A DNA stretch of 60,183 nt, filler included, from Sluysia triapertura (lineage: Eukaryota), in NCBI GenBank assembly GCA_046118255.1. It is 4 parts of 4 records of this genome, joined end to end, with 100 filler letters (N's around TTAATTAATTAA, not from the genome) between each part and the next. Parts side by side here need not be neighbours in the genome. Positions count along the whole stretch, not along the records: positions 11,046 to 38,087 come from JBJNIA010077603.1; 3 more parts are not named here. One strand, 5' to 3'. Below are positions 13,951 to 20,886 of the stretch, in pieces; position 1 is the first letter of the stretch; every line of letters starts with the position of its first letter. Below the pieces are notes generated by a model. It was not told the DNA's origin. It did no database searches and was given only the letters and a program-made list of their open reading frames with translations. Both the position numbers and the translations under genes were made by a program.

Positions 13951-16911
13951 TTTATTAATTAAGGCTTGGAAACTGTGATAAACGTTCTAAGGTAAGAGCA
14001 CATTAATTAATTTAATTAATGTTTTTTGAAATATATTCAGCTAAAAGTGATATTTCTAGAAAATTCATGCACTAAATGAAATAACAGTTTTTCACAATAA
14101 CTTTTCACAATCTAGCTAAGAAAATTAATAGAAATAACACAAAAATTATTTTAATTAATTTTATAAGTTTAAAACAAATTTATTTCATAGAATGAAGGGA
14201 AAATGAAAGGCATATACAAAACGAAACTTTGATATGATTTCGAATCGAATGGTCACTTTCTAGGAAAACGTAATGTTAACATATTACATATCTTTAAAAG
14301 TTATTATAAATATGAAAAACTATCTAAATTTAAGTAGACTAATACAATGTTAATTAATGTTTAAGCGAGTAGTCAAAAGAAATATAATTAATCAAATTAA
14401 TCATTATTAGAAGATTAGTTACTAGACGTTAATTTATCAAAAGATTTTCGGCTTGAGTAAACTCAGAGATTGGCTATGCCTATACGTCAAAGCAATTGCG
14501 CTGAGGTAGCCAAATTCACATTTGCATGCATAACAGTTAATTATAAGGCCTATAATTCGGCCATTTTGTTTTGAATAATTTTATTTTAATTATTATTATA
14601 GTATTACTTTTTTTAAATATTATTATTATATTATTAATATTACTTAATTTTTTTTATTTGCAAACTTTTTCTAGAATTCTTCTTAATACACAAACTTCTA
14701 CATAAAATTAACTAATTATTTGATGTTTGGATTGAAGGTATTTCGTAGAATGAAAGAGTATTAACTTCTTTTCTTCTTATTTTAAGTACATTCTTTATGT
14801 TTGATCTTTAATTTCTTCGTACACGAAGTCTGAATCATTTCATATATTATTTGGTATTTACGTATCAGATAGTTTAGTAATGTTTAAATTGATGTTATAA
14901 ATTGTGAGTATATGATGCACGACGCATAAAGAATTATTTAGCGATTTCTAGACCTGTGATAAGTGCATTTACTTATTTATATTGTAATGTTTTAATATTA
15001 TGTAAATATAATTTATTCACGTTTTAGGTGATCTTTAGGATGAGTTTATTAAGTATTCTAAAAATGTGTGGATATAAAGTAAATTAAATGAGTTATGTTA
15101 TAATCTATGTTATATTTTAATATTGTATTCATGTCAGTTGTTTGGTTTTATGCAGGGTGAATTTGTCTAATATTATTATTATTATCATTTAATTTCTACG
15201 TAATCAATAAAAACATGATGACGTATTAACATGGTGAATTTTACATAAAGCATAAATTATACTCAAAAAAGATTTTCAAAATAACTAATAAAAGATTGAA
15301 ATGAAACAAAAATAAAATATAAATAAAAATTATAAATATAATAAAGTTTTTCATAATAATAATAATAATTTAAAAATTTTTATACCAGCAAGAATAACAA
15401 AACAGACTAATAAATTTTAATAATAATAGTAAAAATAATTTAATAATAATTTGTTAAAAATAATTTAATATTTGTTAAATTCTTAAAATTAAGTTTTAAT
15501 ATTTACAAATTTTGTTTGGAATATCAAAGGCTGTGGAATGTTGTTTGAATAAAAGAAAGAGATTTTAATATTAAAAAGTTAAATAAAATTGAAATAAAAA
15601 AGAATTAAGAATTATTTAGAGGTTTTAGATATTGGCTCGTGCATTTATAACTGAACGCTTATTTGTGATAGTTGTGCTTTAATTTTGTGATAATTGATAA
15701 GTGCGATTTATTATTTTGATTATTGTGTTTAAATGTGAATAATTTAGCAAATAATAATATTGTTAAATACACAACATATCGAATCAATAAGCAAAATTGA
15801 CAGTACGGTAAAACAAATAATTTAGAAATTTCTATGATAAGTTTTATTTTTATATATTACACTAACAATCTTAACCAATCATTTGCGTATAATATTAAAT
15901 TAAACTGAAATCTTAAGAACCGTTTAGACATTTCTTTAAACACGTTTATGAAAAGGAAGAAATCAAATTGATGATGTTCCATTAATTAAATGAATAAAAT
16001 AATTTTTATAATAATTTTAATCAATAACAAAAAATAAAATCAAATCTTTTAATAATGAAATTTTTACAATTCATATTTAGTCATAATAACAATATTACAA
16101 TAAGTTATTGGTATATTTAATGATTATGACTATAATAATCATGCCAATCAATAAATAATACAGTTACCTTGACTTGGCTATACGAATAGATGATAGATTT
16201 ATTCGAATGGGCTTTGCTTAAGTTGAATGTCAAAAAAATAAAGGATTATTTAAACTATTATTATAATTGTGGTTACGTCATGAAACATCGAATAACCATG
16301 TTTTAATTTGATTTTGCATCAAAAGTTTAATAGCATGTATTTGAATTATATTATTACTATTAATGTTATTATAATCATCAAAATTGTAATTATTATTAGT
16401 GTAAAATAGGATATAGCAGATTAATGATATTACATTTTCTGTGTTATCAGTAAAATAATAAAAATAGAATATATTCAAACAATTAAGATACATTACCGAG
16501 TTTTATTTTATTATTACAATGTGATAACTAATCTTAATTTCCTAACAAAGTTTAATACATTGTATTTTGATTAATTTTTTGTATTGTATTTGCGGTGGTT
16601 CAGCCGACGACTACGTACACATCACATAAATCAATAACACGCAAACCTTGCCTATATCATTCATAACATTACATTATTCATCGCTCCTTCAACATTATAA
16701 ATTCACATATACCTAATAAAATTTGTTTCATTAACATTCTAAATTAGAACAGTAAGCATGACACCCACTGTCAGCCTGTCGTCATTGTAGCACACCTTTT
16801 CTCGTGTCTAAAATTTTCCATTTTTATATTTTATATTTTTTACAATTTTATATTTTTGCGATTGTATAATTACAAAATTATATAATTGCAAAAATATAAA
16901 ATTATATAATT

Positions 16912-17149
16912 TTTTTAAAGAAATTAATTACTGATTCAGGCCCAGGTAGAGTGATGAAAAGATTGGTTAAAAATGTTGTTGTTTTCTTATCAGTGCTATT
17001 AAGTTTATAATCATTCTACCTGGGCCTGAACCAATGAGTGATACTTCACAAACAATTATAAACTTAATAGTACTGATAAGAAAAACATTTTAAATCAATC
17101 TTTTCGTCACTCTACCTGGGTCTGAACCAGTAATTAATTTCTTTAAAAA
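16912..17149. repeat. Nested ~238-bp hairpin (MITE-like) with a third copy of its core motif in the loop
   Basis: Arms ttttaaagaaattaattactgattcaggcccaggtagagtga... and ...tcactctacctgggtctgaaccagtaattaatttctttaaaa. An extra tctacctgggcctgaacca lies at about 17015-17033. Confidence 0.85.
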
Positions 17150-17369
17150 TAAGTTTTGCACAACTAAATCAATCTTTATATCATCACATACTCACGGTCT
17201 TCGTCAAATATTTTAAAATAACATTCAATATGATATTTTGTACCATAAAAACTACAAAATAAGAATCGATATTTATCATGAAAACATAGTCTTATAACAG
17301 AATTTGTCATTAGGACAAATATTGCATCGATGACTGAAATATGAATGTTAAATTTGTTTCAGATTGTTA

Positions 17370-17810
17370 ACCAGTTTGAGGTTCATGAGATAAATATTGT
17401 CCAACGAAATTGTTCGCTGTACTTGAAAGATACTCTGACTGGGGTGGTTGCAATACAAATTGTACAATCTTTTCCATGACTTAACTTAAATTTAATATTT
17501 GAATTATAATAATCTCGGGTGATTGAATCACATGTTCCGAGGATTATTTAACATTGGAATATTTTTCTTCCCAAAAATCCAATTTAGAACAAACATATGC
17601 ATCAACTGATTGCAGTTTATCAGTAGCTATTAGCTCTACTTTATTGATAACCTTCAATTGATTTTCACTCCATGTTAAAGTAGAACTAAGTATAATTTTG
17701 ATTCTTTATCCCTTGATAATATTCACGGGATAATCAGCTAGCCTTGACAATGACTTTAAACCACTATTATTTAGCTGAGAAGTTTCTTCCAGAATATTAT
17801 TATCAATCAT
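17370..17810 (-). pseudogene. Perilipin (PAT-domain)-like gene fragment inside the foldback element
   Basis: Translates ...LSRLADYPV...LSSTLTWSENQLK...LQSVDAYVCSKLDFWEEKYSNVK*SSEHVI..., then after frameshifts SEQ/FVGQYLSHE. Perilipin motifs are RVxxLP, YACKGLDxIEExLPILxQP and SExxVDQYLP. Stops at 17706-08 and 17544-46. Confidence 0.6.
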
Positions 17811-19066
17811 AGAGTAAATAGTCTTGAAAGCTTTTTAAAACATTTTGAAATAACTTTAAAATTATGATGCCCTATTGCATAGGTCATTGCTTTGACCTGT
17901 ACCTTTCATGTAAACAAAAAATAATCTTTTTCAGATATAGCATAAAATTAAAAATTATAAAAATTCGAAATTACAAGATATCTAAATATAAAATATAAAA
18001 TTATATAATTATGTAATTATACAATTGCAAAAATATAAAATTATGCAATTATAGAATTATAAAATTGTAAAAAATATAAAATATAAAAATGGAAAAATTT
18101 TAGACACGAGAAAAGGTGTTGTGCTACAATGACGATGGGCTGACGTGGGTATCATGCTTACTGTTCTAATTTAGAATGTTAGTGAAACAAATTTTATTAG
18201 GCATGTGTGAATTTATAATGTTGAAGGAGCAATGAATAATGTAGTGTTATGAATGATATAGGCAAGACATGTTGTAATGTATTTTTGCAATGATGTTTGT
18301 GTGTTATTGATTGATATGATTTATGTGATGTGTACGCAGTCGTCAGTTGACCCACCACATTATTATACTTGACGTTGATTTCGAAACTGGAGATCGAAAT
18401 CTGATCTCAAAGACCGCAACTGATGTCATGGCAAAAGATTTTAGAAAGGTAGAAAAAAAAATATAATGAATAATGTTTAACAAAAAATCAGTGTTTAAAA
18501 TATTAATAAAAAACCACTTTTGGAACAATTAATTCAGTTAATTAAGGAGTGTAAAGTATGGTCCCAATAATTGTTTAGAAAAATGATGGTAAAAATTGTT
18601 TGAAAAATGAAACATTATAATGCTGGTAAACGATAAATCAACAATGCTAAAGTTTACACTTTTCATCAAAAACAATATTGAAACATAAAATGGAGTAAAA
18701 CTATATGATGATCTACCTTAATCAGAGTTGATATTCCATGCTTTTCAAAAAAATTGACAAATAAGAACTTTAGATGACTCAGTTGATGCGGAAAAGAATT
18801 TGAAATCACTCTAAGTAAAGGACACACTACTACACAGAGTGTAAAATGTTACTTAATGGAAAAGTCAAAACTAATGAACAGTAAAATAAAAGCGCAAACG
18901 TAATTGTTTAAAATTAAAGGAAAATAAATACCGAAAATAAAATAAGTACGATTACATATGTCTTAGAGTGAAAAAACATTTTTAATGTTTTCCCATACTT
19001 AGGAAAATGTATTGTTTATACAAAAATGCATATACATTAGGAAAAATTCAAACAAAAAAGACAAAC

Positions 19067-20886
19067 CTCTAACATGCAATCAACCCAACCCCCATGACCC
19101 ACTTGCAAATTCCGTACTATATCCAAGTCAAGATCAATTACAACTCGATTTCCCATTTGAATACCTTGACTCGTACCTCCAGAATTTGTAAATCCTAACA
19201 ATGGTAAATGATCTTTGTAAACAGAAAGCCCTTTAGCTTCTACCACAACCTGAAATCAAAAAATATATTCTAAATTGTTATTTTAAGATTACTATTAAGT
19301 TATGGAAAAATTACACAAAAGTGAGGTTTTCCTCGCGTTTTATTAAGCGCAGCCTGCTTGCAGAATTTATTTCAGTTTGTTTAGCTAAAATATTTTGTTA
19401 AAGTTAACATAAATTAATAATTGACTCAGTTGGAGAAAAAAATTAAAAACTATATTTCCATACCAGAGACAAGTCAAAAGTACGCACAATAATTTACAGT
19501 TATAATCATAAAATAAAGTGAGTAAAGATAATGAAACATCGATTTTCAATAAAAATATAAACCTAAGGTATAAATTATCTCATTATTTAAAATATCACTA
19601 AGAATACAATTCATATAATATAAAGAAAAAAATTTTTAAAAATTAATTCACAATGTGCACTGAGAACAATTACCGCATATCATGCTTAAAAACAAAATAA
19701 TAAAAACATTTTAATTATGTCTTTTAAAATTTTATGTATTTCATTATATGTTCATTACTAGAATGCGATATTATAAGATTCTACCATCATTTATTTTATT
19801 GTGATTAAAATGTTTATTTCTTCCTCAATAATTTTTATTTAAAACTATTAATTAAACTGTTAACTATACCTTTAAATCTGACATTCCATCATGACCCACT
19901 CGATAAAGATTTTTGCCACCACATTCCCAAATAACATAAGCAGCCGATCTCGAAGAGCTACCACACCAATCTTGAATTTCTGTAACTTTACCTTTATGAC
20001 CTGCCCCTCCGTCTTGATCACTCCATTGCCAATCTACACCACGAACAACTCGAGCACCTGTGAACAATCCTTTGCATAACAATTTTTTACTTTTCCGACG
20101 ACATTCTACAACCATTTTACTAAAAAATAAAAACCTTTATGTTTGTAATGTAATACACAACTTTAAATTATGAATGTTATAATAATTATATTATAACTAT
20201 AATAATGAATGTCACAAGGATTGTGTTATTTTACTTAAGTCGCATAATTTTAATATAAAGAAATATACAAATAAAATACAAATATGATAAAGTAAATATG
20301 ATAAATACAAATGAAACTCATTACAAATTTACCTTCATGAAATTTTAATAAATTCAAAAAACTTATGAATTAATACAAAATAAATAAAAACGGAGAATAA
20401 AACTTACGAAGTATTATTTGGATATATAATTCTAACAAAACGATGGCGTAAGTTATGCCGATCTCCATGATAACATAAAGAACATAAATCTGTATTTAAG
20501 CATTCAATACATTTCCAGCGAATACCTGTAATTGGATTCTAAATCAAAAATATGCATTTGATTAACAAATTTAAATTCTTTAAATACAAAACAATATGTT
20601 TAGTAAGAAATATTCAACATACCTGATGACAATATTCACACTTTACGTCAGCATGTCTCACTCCAGTGGGTGCATTATCAACTATGCGTAAATCATAATT
20701 TGAACCACATCTATAATTTGCAGCAGTGCCATTATCCCAAACAACGACAACTTCTTCGGCAGATTCAAAACTTCGTACAGTTCCCATATGACCTTCACCA
20801 CCATCTTGGCGATTCCATTTCCAATCTGGTCCTCTCATAACACGACTCCCAATGTCATCTTGGAGAAATTTTTGAGTTGCTGACAT
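19067..20886 (-). CDS. mib1: E3 ubiquitin ligase mind bomb, 5' part (exons 20886-20623, 20538-20408, 20119-19870, 19249-19067): MIB/HERC2, ZZ finger, MIB/HERC2, start of MIB repeat
   Basis: [21 protein letters not shown]...[17 protein letters not shown] finger [16 protein letters not shown]...[36 protein letters not shown], and YKDHLPLLG...LQVGHGGW. All junctions are GT-AG with consistent phases. Downstream exons were not found. Confidence 0.95.

What the first reader, a model, noticed from the sequence alone, without database searches (positions are those of the whole stretch)
16591..18359. Long-TIR element carrying a perilipin-like gene fragment (Pack-type capture in an animal)
Seen: ~300-360 bp inverted arms starting TG and ending CA, no transposase, and an interior with a nested hairpin plus a ~440-bp degenerate frame carrying perilipin motifs. 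The outer ~145 bp of each arm looks LTR-like (TG...AATAAA...TAACA). Known: Pack-MULEs and related Pack-type elements are mainly documented in plants, and TGT...ACA long TIRs occur in Ginger elements with gypsy-like integrases. Inference: a non-autonomous element, or two head-to-head element ends, that mobilises host gene pieces.
Basis: partly seen in the sequence, partly recalled or inferred. Interest (0 to 1): 0.8.

Follow-up and report, generated by a model that had tools for sequence, protein, structure and literature searches.

The report
Rearranged transposon carrying a perilipin fragment
This is a dead, rearranged copy of a small non-autonomous transposon family that picked up the front end of a perilipin-family gene and spread it to at least 14 places; the long inverted arms are a one-off inverted duplication in this copy, not the family's design.

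Summary
Window 16591-16913 and 17997-18359 are inverted copies, 93.8% identical over the outer 225 nt, with TG and CA ends. The interior holds about 460 bp that is 91.8% identical to the 5' end of an intact, single-copy 345-aa perilipin-family ORF on another contig.

The long-TIR reading fails. The arm is the 3' end of a 1.0-2.2 kb repeat family, called X here. X has ends 5'-TATTGTGG...CCACCACA-3', a 12-nt imperfect TIR and 5-bp target-site duplications, five of them perfect. In about 60 other loci, and at 100 listed terminal 30-mer matches on 100 different contigs, the arm is never paired.

In this copy the first ~500 bp of X are replaced by an inverted duplicate of its own 3' part. The "nested hairpin" is the centre of that same palindrome. 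The two arms are sister sequences (support 96/91).

The capture reading holds. Complete X copies with their own duplications carry the perilipin piece: 12 copies of a 222-bp version, plus one other. In the 12-copy lineage it is fused at a 10-bp microhomology to a second coding fragment, giving in-frame chimeric ORFs.

This is a new member of a known kind, since Pack-TIRs are already described in animals. The superfamily of X is unresolved.

The parts
16591..16913 (-). Left arm. It is an inverted copy of the 3'-terminal part of family X (about x1385-1707 of the reference copy). It has 9- and 28-nt deletions relative to the right arm, and its outer end is the family terminus (TGCGGTGG...).
   Evidence: sister of the right arm in the tree
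16914..17011 (-). Left stem of the 'nested hairpin'. It is an inverted copy of X positions about x547-641. In other genomic copies this sequence occurs only once.
17012..17054 (+). Loop and turning point of the palindrome. This is where the forward X copy starts, at about x503; the first ~500 bp of X are missing.
   Evidence: (I13)
17055..17360 (+). Forward X backbone (about x547-850). It is 86% identical to the reference copy in L036 and includes the right stem of the hairpin. It has about 55 genomic candidates.
17351..17812 (-). Captured fragment of a perilipin-family gene. It runs from about 10 nt upstream of the ATG to about codon 166 and is antisense to X. It is 91.8% identical to the parent, with deletions of 3, 28, 2, 3, 1, 20 and 3 nt and in-frame stops, so it is a pseudogene piece. 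The sub-module 17447-17668 is the part shared with 12 other X copies.
   Evidence: parent ORF L031:1291-2325:- scores 39.4 bits for PF03036
17813..17996 (+). X backbone between the cargo and the arm. It is shared with copies L003, L016, L017 and L027 from about 17840 onward.
17997..18359 (+). Right arm. This is the genuine 3' end of this X copy, ending ...CCACCACA. It contains an AT-rich tract with 8-bp periodicity.
16586..16590 (.). Left flank GTATT. It is a possible 5-bp target-site duplication partner of 18360-18364 (TTATT), matching at 4 of 5 positions.
   Evidence: chance of 4 or more matches out of 5 is 0.037 in this contig; weak evidence
18360..18364 (.). Right flank TTATT (see the left-flank entry).

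Best explanation
The segment is one immobile, decayed copy of a non-autonomous transposable-element family, called X here. X copies are 1.0-2.2 kb with ends 5'-TATTGTGG...CCACCACA-3', a 12-nt imperfect terminal inverted repeat and a 5-bp target-site duplication. No transposase is encoded, so the family must be moved in trans by a DDE transposase or integrase that was not found.

In one lineage of X, about 0.5 kb of the 5' end of a single-copy perilipin-family gene replaced part of the interior. The likely route is a template switch at short homology during repair or replication (transduplication, 'Pack-type' capture). That lineage then transposed and diversified by internal deletions into three forms: this copy (462 bp of cargo), L003 (about 240 bp) and a 12-copy subfamily (222 bp). 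The 12-copy subfamily also gained a second coding fragment.

The long inverted arms are specific to this copy. Its first ~500 bp are replaced by an inverted duplicate of its own 3' part, a foldback palindrome with a 43-nt loop. An ~850-bp deletion later shortened the left half to the arm plus one hairpin stem.

Shown: the family, its ends and its TSDs; the parent gene; the multiple cargo-bearing copies; the uniqueness of the palindrome; the sister relation of the arms. Inferred: the template-switch mechanism, the class II nature of X, the foldback origin, and whether the palindrome was inserted as a unit.
For: **Family and ends.**
- The arm has 353 genomic candidates. Its terminal 30-mer has 149 matches against 0 in the control.
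- The right end is sharp in 24 copies with unrelated flanks.
- A distinct conserved left end, TATTGTGGATGA, is present in 11 copies.
- Perfect 5-bp TSDs occur in L027 (CAATG), L032 (GTAGT), L036 (ATTTA), L053 (TCAGT) and L061 (CACCA); L025 and L040 match at 4 of 5.
- Internal-deletion derivatives keep both ends: L008, L027, L028 and L029.

**Cargo.**
- The parent is a 345-aa ORF scoring 39.4 bits for PF03036 against a cut-off of 33. All 30 top Atlas look-alikes are perilipins.
- Window 17351-17812 aligns to the parent at 91.8%.
- The parent's C-terminal half is single-copy.
- There are 14 places with perilipin DNA: the parent, the window and 12 X copies with identical module boundaries. L003 is an additional copy.
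- Complete cargo-bearing elements have distinct TSDs: L061/L069 and L032/L074.
- The X|perilipin junction lies at the same X position in all lineages.
- The perilipin|second-gene junction lies at a 10-bp microhomology, TGATTTTCAC.

**Palindrome.**
- In every other locus, both hairpin halves map to one single place.
- No other locus has an inverted arm within the fetched sequence (up to ~1.5 kb on each side).
- The left and right arms are sisters with 96/91 support among 23 copies.
- Homology stops exactly at the family terminus on both sides.
Against: - No autonomous partner and no transposase were found, so the class of X rests on indirect signs.
- Right ends outnumber left ends: 149 against 28 marker hits, at different stringency. 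Many arm-only copies have no detectable left end within 1-1.5 kb. That pattern could also fit decay, larger unseen cargos, or another transposition mode.
- Contigs are short (263,945 contigs in 619 Mb), so partners more than ~1.5-3 kb away would be missed.
- The backbone of the window copy is closer to a cargo-less copy (86% to L036) than to the 12-copy cargo subfamily (66-76%). A single capture therefore also needs recombination between subfamilies or uneven rates.
- The junctions could not be checked on reads.
Confidence: 0.72

Rival explanations
1. This is a member of a true long-TIR, Ginger-like or foldback-like Pack family. The 300-360 bp arms are the family's TIRs, and they recur around different cargos.
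For: The arms are real and end in TG...CA. The outer flanks match at 4 of 5 positions, as a 5-bp TSD would. The family's ends resemble the TGTNR ends of Ginger and LTR elements.
Against: No other inverted pair appears in about 60 loci. The 100 listed terminal 30-mers lie on 100 different contigs. Complete copies with perfect TSDs have a different left end. Ginger1 has a CCGG 4-bp TSD and 40-270 bp TIRs, and metazoan Ginger2 has a 4-bp TSD.
Confidence: 0.04
2. Two independent X insertions landed head to head. A later deletion removed both 5' parts, leaving a pseudo-TIR structure by chance.
For: The family is abundant. Both outer ends are exact family termini. The left arm is only a little closer to the right arm (93-94%) than to L003 (90-93%).
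Against: The arms are sisters with 96/91 support. The two halves are truncated almost symmetrically, at x547 and about x503 with a 43-nt loop, which one random deletion would rarely produce. The outer flanks match at 4 of 5 positions (p about 0.04).
Confidence: 0.15
3. X is not a DNA transposon but the LTR of an LTR retrotransposon, now mostly solo. In that case the perilipin piece sits inside an LTR, and copies spread by retrotransposition followed by LTR-LTR recombination.
For: A 5-bp TSD and T(G/A)T...ACA-type ends with a short imperfect inverted repeat are typical of LTRs. All sampled copies look 'solo'.
Against: About 35 right flanks and 11 left flanks are all unrelated, so no shared PBS, PPT or internal region is seen. 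No direct pairs were found on any contig. Short derivatives keep both ends, and filler DNA is joined at microhomology, as expected from abortive gap repair of cut-and-paste elements. A 1.7-2.2 kb LTR carrying a 300-aa open frame would be unusual.
Confidence: 0.22
4. The palindrome is an assembly artefact: a chimeric join in the AT-rich repeat tract or an amplification chimera.
For: The assembly is very fragmented. The arm|hairpin junction lies in low-complexity AT-rich sequence.
Against: The two halves differ by about 6% and by several indels, which is unlike artefactual snap-back chimeras. One public run's independent contigs hold 83% of the sampled words of 16300-18660, although it may be the source sample.
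Confidence: 0.05

Closest known systems
Pack-TIRs in animals (Tan et al. 2021, Nat Commun 12:4280, PMC8277862), including the multicopy Ssk-FB4 family of Drosophila
   Same: A non-autonomous element carries a host gene piece whose parent lies elsewhere. [quoted passage not shown] Microhomology sits at the breakpoints, and chimeric ORFs are formed.
   Different: The family here has only a 12-nt imperfect TIR and a 5-bp TSD. Its superfamily is unknown, and it is not hAT, MULE or Tc1/mariner. The cargo is a 5' gene fragment, not a near-complete gene. No transcription data were obtained.
Pack-MULEs and other plant Pack-type elements, including GingerRoot elements with gene fragments (PMC6839031)
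   Same: Gene fragments from more than one gene are joined inside one element and amplified.
   Different: MULEs have 9-11 bp TSDs and long TIRs, and GingerRoot has a 6-bp TSD and 100-150 bp TIRs. Here the long arms are not a family trait.
Ginger1 / Ginger2-TDD DNA transposons (Bao et al. 2010, PMC2836005)
   Same: TGTNR-like end (TGTGG at the 3' end, read inward). The 5-bp TSD matches TDD-4/5 of Dictyostelium.
   Different: Ginger has TIRs of 40-270 bp (Ginger1) or 50-180 bp (Ginger2). Its TSD is 4 bp in animals, CCGG or AT-rich RTATAY. No integrase-encoding partner was found here. The left end reads TATTG, not TGTNR.
Solo LTRs of LTR retrotransposons
   Same: 5-bp TSD, TG/CA-like ends with a short imperfect inverted repeat, and many isolated copies.
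   Different: No direct pairs, no shared internal region, and no PBS or PPT next to any sampled end. Deletion derivatives and filler captures look like class II repair products.
Foldback-type rearrangements of transposons (inverted-duplication derivatives such as double-Ds-like or snap-back copies; from general knowledge, not tested here)
   Same: One copy turned into a palindrome with a short loop and two identical-type ends.
   Different: Here it is a single instance with no evidence of further spread.

Membership tests
Pack-type (gene-fragment-carrying) non-autonomous transposon | Discrete element with family-typical ends and target-site duplication | tested here: met
   Ends TATTGTGG...CCACCACA. 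Five perfect 5-bp TSDs and two matching at 4 of 5.
Pack-type (gene-fragment-carrying) non-autonomous transposon | Interior holds a fragment of a host gene whose intact parent lies elsewhere | tested here: met
   The parent is a 345-aa ORF on C186137 that passes PF03036. The window fragment is 91.8% identical to it. The uncaptured half of the parent is single-copy.
Pack-type (gene-fragment-carrying) non-autonomous transposon | No transposase of its own | tested here: met
   No ORF over 61 aa in the window copy. Family ORFs give no transposase or integrase Pfam hit.
Pack-type (gene-fragment-carrying) non-autonomous transposon | Cargo-bearing element transposed after capture | tested here: met
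   12 copies share the same 222-bp module. Complete copies L061/L069 (CACCA) and L032/L074 (GTAGT) have different TSDs. L003 is a third lineage.
Pack-type (gene-fragment-carrying) non-autonomous transposon | Terminal inverted repeats of a known TIR superfamily, with a matching autonomous element | tested here: inconclusive
   Only a 12-nt imperfect TIR, matching at 8 of 12 positions.
   No second inverted pair in about 60 loci. 100 listed terminal 30-mers lie on 100 different contigs. The palindrome junction is unique.
Ginger (Ginger1, Ginger2/TDD) | TIRs of about 40-270 bp with TGTNR ends | tested here: not met
   The family TIR is only about 12 nt. The right end is TGTGG and the left end TATTG. 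Definition taken.
Ginger (Ginger1, Ginger2/TDD) | 4-bp TSD (CCGG/CCGT for Ginger1; 4 bp in metazoan Ginger2; 5 bp only in TDD-4/5) | tested here: not met
   The TSD here is 5 bp with no sequence preference. It matches only the Dictyostelium TDD elements.
Ginger (Ginger1, Ginger2/TDD) | Autonomous copies encode a Gypsy-like integrase | not tested
   No longer copy with the X ends could be retrieved.
Solo LTR of an LTR retrotransposon | TG...CA ends and 4-6 bp TSD | tested here: inconclusive
   The 3' end ...CA and the 5-bp TSD are met. The 5' end is TATTG, with TG only at position 4.
Solo LTR of an LTR retrotransposon | Some copies occur as direct pairs flanking an internal region with PBS and PPT | tested here: not met
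   All sampled flanks are unrelated. No contig holds two termini. The test is limited by short contigs.
Perilipin family (PF03036), for the cargo | Significant match to the family profile | tested here: met
   The parent ORF scores 39.4 bits against a cut-off of 33, E 5e-10, covering profile positions 8-237. The genome scan gives 37.8 bits. Atlas look-alikes are all perilipins. The short pieces of the window copy alone give no Pfam hit; their assignment rests on 91.8% DNA identity to the parent.

The most novel reading that the evidence does not exclude
X is a so-far undescribed integrase-type (5-bp TSD, TG/CA-like ends) cut-and-paste family in an animal. It repeatedly shuffles host coding fragments into in-frame chimeric ORFs: a perilipin N-terminus, a RING/SEDFI-repeat fragment and the element's own open frame. 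Through foldback it can also create new long-TIR derivatives that are still inserted as units. On that reading, the window copy with its 4/5 TSD is a snapshot of how long-TIR Pack elements are born.
Probability: 0.2. Interest if true: 0.6.

Novelty: new member of a known kind. Interest (0 to 1): 0.4.

Why it matters
Gene-fragment capture by DNA transposons is well documented in plants. In animals it has been catalogued (370 Pack-TIRs), but multicopy families that clearly transposed after capture are few.

This case has three useful features:
- an identifiable single-copy parent;
- three deletion lineages that trace back to what looks like one capture;
- microhomology at the joins, and a second captured fragment fused in frame.

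It is therefore a usable natural example for studying how such chimeras form. It also shows how a 'long-TIR' look can arise secondarily, which is a warning for structure-based TE annotation.

It does not open a new category. The cargo copy in the window is a pseudogene fragment with no sign of function.

Tried and rejected
- **Hammerhead or other ribozymes, or Penelope-like pseudo-LTRs.** The Rfam scan of 16300-18700 at E up to 10 gave only chance-level miRNA and snoRNA hits. Rejected.
- **Helitron.** Rejected, because copies have 5-bp TSDs and no TC/CTRR ends.
- **Transib** (5-bp TSD). The ends are not CAC...GTG (Transib ends recalled from general knowledge).
- **LINE-like 5' truncation.** Considered because right ends outnumber left ends. 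Arm-only copies show no variable TSDs or tails at their approximate left limits, and full copies have a fixed 5-bp TSD. Left open as a minor possibility.
- **Pfam on the window's four cargo pieces.** Blank.
- **Word search for homologues** of the parent ORF and of the 301-aa X open frame. Both blank.
- **Coding constraint on the X antisense frame.** Median dN/dS is 1.03, so no constraint is shown.
- **Empty-site search with both flanks.** The right flank is unique, the left flank holds only an unrelated short repeat, and no empty allele was found.
- **Reads.** Those places were sent to no tool afterwards, and later analyses worked beside them.
- **Fetching more genome stretches** to look for an autonomous partner.
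- **Organism.** Not identified. It is an animal-type genome: MIB/HERC2 and Hook-like exons lie in the contig, GC is 24%, and the assembly is 619 Mb.
Full report
**1. What is in the sequence**

The two arms exist. Window 16591-16913 is the reverse complement of 17997-18359. The best stretch is 122 nt at 95% complementarity. The outer 225 nt align at 93.8%, with three gaps of 9, 28 and 3 nt in the left arm. The inner ~100 nt of each arm are an AT-rich tract with 8-bp periodicity. The outer ends read TGCGGTGG... and ...CCACCACA.

Between the arms lie three things:
- a 240-bp hairpin, with stems 16912-17011 and 17055-17149 and a loop at 17012-17054;
- no ORF longer than 61 aa;
- on the minus strand of 17370-17834, a frame broken by three stops that reads like the N-terminus of a perilipin.

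Rfam finds nothing above chance. The contig is 24% G+C. It also carries a MIB/HERC2-type exon and a Hook-like exon, so it is animal-type nuclear DNA.

**2. The arm is the 3' end of a repeat family, not a TIR**

Positions are written in three ways below. "q" is the position within the finding, counted from window 16591 (window = q + 16590). "x" is the position in the reference X copy (x1-1707, defined below). "y" is the position in the complete X-P copy of L069 (y1 = L069 206).

The first 220 nt of the arm have 353 candidate places in the 619-Mb assembly. The terminal 30-mer, allowing up to 3 mismatches, occurs 149 times (75 forward, 74 reverse) against 0 for the reversed control. The 100 listed places lie on 100 different contigs.

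In 28 arm-seeded loci and about 30 interior-seeded loci, each fetched with up to 1.5 kb on either side, both window arms hit the same single place. No second inverted pair exists.

The outer end is sharp in 24 copies with unrelated flanks. Many copies are collinear with the window interior, in the order q~420-770, a variable middle, then q~1250-1769.

Using L036 (reverse-complemented, positions 860-2566, called x1-1707) as reference, the family extends ~500 bp further left than the window copy. It ends in a conserved 5' terminus, TATTGTGGATGA, seen in 11 copies with unrelated flanks.

Complete copies of 1.0-2.2 kb carry 5-bp target-site duplications. These are perfect in L027 (CAATG), L032 (GTAGT), L036 (ATTTA), L053 (TCAGT) and L061 (CACCA), and match at 4 of 5 in L025 and L040.

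The two ends share only a 12-nt imperfect inverted repeat: TATTGTGGATGA against TGTGGTGGTTCA, 8 of 12 matching. Short derivatives keep both ends (L008, L027, L028, L029). I call the family X.

**3. Why this copy looks like a long-TIR element**

Mapped onto X, the window reads as three parts:
- RC(x~1385-1707) at 16591-16913;
- RC(x547-641) at 16914-17011;
- forward x~503-1707 from 17012 to 18359.

The first ~500 bp of X are absent within 1.5 kb. So the "nested hairpin" and the "long TIRs" are two parts of one palindrome that turns round in a 43-nt loop. The left half has additionally lost the counterpart of q560-1406, about 850 bp.

In every other copy, the two hairpin halves map to one and the same single sequence. 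No other place in the genome matches across the arm|hairpin junction or the palindrome centre.

In a maximum-likelihood tree of the outer 235 nt of 23 copies, the left and right arms are sisters. Support is ultrafast bootstrap 96 and SH-aLRT 91, with a path length of 0.086.

Homology stops exactly at the family terminus on both sides. The flanks are not inverted copies of each other. The outer flanks, GTATT and TTATT, match at 4 of 5 positions; the chance of that in this contig is 0.037.

The near-symmetric truncation (x547 against ~x503), the sister relation and the exact termini fit best with a foldback of a broken copy. Either it was then integrated through its two identical ends, or it formed at the site. 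I cannot tell which, because no empty site exists in the assembly.

Two independent head-to-head insertions followed by a deletion remain possible, at about 15%.

**4. The cargo**

A scan of the genome with Pfam Perilipin found one place above the cut-off: C186137, with an open frame of 351 aa. Its ATG-to-stop ORF of 345 aa scores 39.4 bits (cut-off 33, E 5e-10) over profile positions 8-237. The 30 nearest Atlas clusters are all perilipins or LSD-1-like proteins, at a score of 0.92. A word search found no close homologues.

Window 17351-17812 aligns to the 5' end of this ORF, from ~10 nt upstream of the ATG to about codon 166. There are 437 matches and 39 mismatches (91.8%), with deletions of 3, 28, 2, 3, 1, 20 and 3 nt. 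The window piece is therefore a decayed pseudogene fragment. The four pieces between stops give no Pfam hit on their own.

The uncaptured C-terminal half of the parent is single-copy. The parent locus has no X sequence within ~1.5 kb. The direction is therefore gene to element.

**5. The cargo has been mobilised**

A DNA search with the fragment finds 14 places. These are the window, the parent, and 12 X copies that all hold the same 222-bp module, window 17447-17668.

These 12 form a ~2.1-kb subfamily, X-P, whose members are 79-84% identical along their length. Complete members have their own TSDs: L061/L069 has CACCA and L032/L074 has GTAGT.

A further complete copy, L003 (1507 bp), has a canonical 5' end and an arm 87% identical to the window's. 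It carries three remnants of the same fragment, corresponding to parent L065 1501-1530, 1575-1667 and 1862-1989.

In all three lineages the X|perilipin junction is at the same X position. X-P differs from the window by an 86-bp deletion between short TTKCA repeats. That pattern argues for one capture of at least 516 bp followed by different internal deletions.

One point does not fit neatly. The window's backbone is nearer to a cargo-less copy (86% to L036) than to X-P (66-76%). This would need recombination between subfamilies or uneven rates.

**6. A second captured fragment and chimeric frames**

In X-P, the perilipin module is followed by ~300 bp that is 83-88% identical to part of long open frames on other contigs: L098 (413 aa) and L099 (379 aa). 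These frames have a RING-like start and SEDFI-type repeats. Mago-nashi pieces pass Pfam's cut-off in L098 (46.7 bits) and fall below it in L099 (14.2 bits).

The join lies at a 10-bp microhomology, TGATTTTCAC, present in both sources. At the window's X|perilipin join, the two sources share an imperfect 13-nt similarity.

The fragments are in frame with each other. They are also in frame with an open frame that runs antisense through the X backbone. This gives open frames of 153-189 aa in L069, L062 and L033.

The backbone frame reaches 301 aa in L038 and has no Pfam or word-search relatives. Median dN/dS among 23 aligned sequences is 1.03, so no coding constraint is shown. The scarcity of stops in a 24% G+C genome is unexplained.

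**7. What kind of element X is**

The following points fit a cut-and-paste DNA transposon repaired by template switching, the accepted route to Pack-type elements:
- fixed 5-bp TSDs;
- short imperfect TIRs;
- derivatives that keep both ends;
- interior replacements joined at microhomology;
- the absence of any shared sequence next to ~35 right and 11 left ends.

However, 5-bp TSDs and TG/CA-like ends are also the signature of LTRs. The assembly is too fragmented to exclude old solo LTRs. I put class II at about 0.6 and solo LTR at about 0.2.

X is not a Ginger element by the published definition. Ginger1 has a CCGG 4-bp TSD and 40-270 bp TIRs. Metazoan Ginger2 has a 4-bp TSD and 50-180 bp TIRs. 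Only the Dictyostelium TDD elements have a 5-bp TSD.

Right ends (149) outnumber the left-end marker (28), though at different stringency. About half of the arm-seeded loci have no detectable left end nearby. I could not decide whether these are decayed fragments or elements with larger interiors.

**8. Comparison with what is known, and verdict**

Pack-type capture in animals is documented: 370 Pack-TIRs in 100 genomes. Only a handful are multicopy families, such as Ssk-FB4, that transposed after capture, with microhomology at the breakpoints (PMC8277862).

The present family behaves the same way, so it is a new member of a known kind. What is somewhat unusual is the end and TSD type, the fusion of two fragments in frame, and the secondary foldback that mimics long TIRs.

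Its interpretation is right about capture and wrong about the architecture.

**9. Limits**

Those places were sent to no tool afterwards.
- Only one DNA run holds the stretch, and it may be the source sample.
- The organism was not identified.

Noticed in passing
L098:486-1724 (-) and L099:283-1419 (-): Long open frames of 413 and 379 aa that look like mosaics. They have a RING-like start and repeated '...LSEDFI..F.DKV.W...' units. L098 also has two Mago-nashi fragments (PF02792, 46.7 bits); L099's Mago-nashi match is below cut-off (14.2 bits). DNA related to part of these frames occurs on many contigs, which suggests another gene-fragment-shuffling family in this genome.
   Followed up: partly
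L038:918-1820 (+); also L036:1240-1722, L050, L040, L082, L059: The X backbone carries an open frame of up to 301 aa, antisense to the orientation used in this report. It is conserved in register across copies that are 70-85% identical, and it has few stops despite 24% G+C. It has no Pfam or word-search relatives, and dN/dS is about 1. Unexplained.
   Followed up: partly
L033:541-1107 (+), L062:1160-1702 (+), L069:1127-1585 (-): In-frame chimeric open frames of 153-189 aa inside X-P copies. They join the second-gene fragment, the perilipin module and the X backbone frame.
   Followed up: partly
window 16810-16913 and the inner part of the right arm: An AT-rich tract with 8-bp periodicity (TATAAAAT-like units) inside every arm. 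Its length varies between copies, and it limits BLAST extension.
   Followed up: no
window 16337-16408: A short (~60-70 bp) unrelated repeat in the left flank, with at least 62 genomic candidates at about 82% identity.
   Followed up: no
window 20614-20886 (-) and 29352-29669 (+): A 90-aa open frame that reads like a MIB/HERC2 domain and a 105-aa coiled-coil frame that reads like a Hook protein (recognised by eye only). They indicate animal host genes near the element.
   Followed up: no
L004, L018, L007, L006, L029, L015, L030: Several arm-only copies begin to match X at nearly the same point (x1261-1289) and have unrelated sequence upstream. This may be a distinct short subfamily, or X elements with large unseen interiors.
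   Followed up: partly
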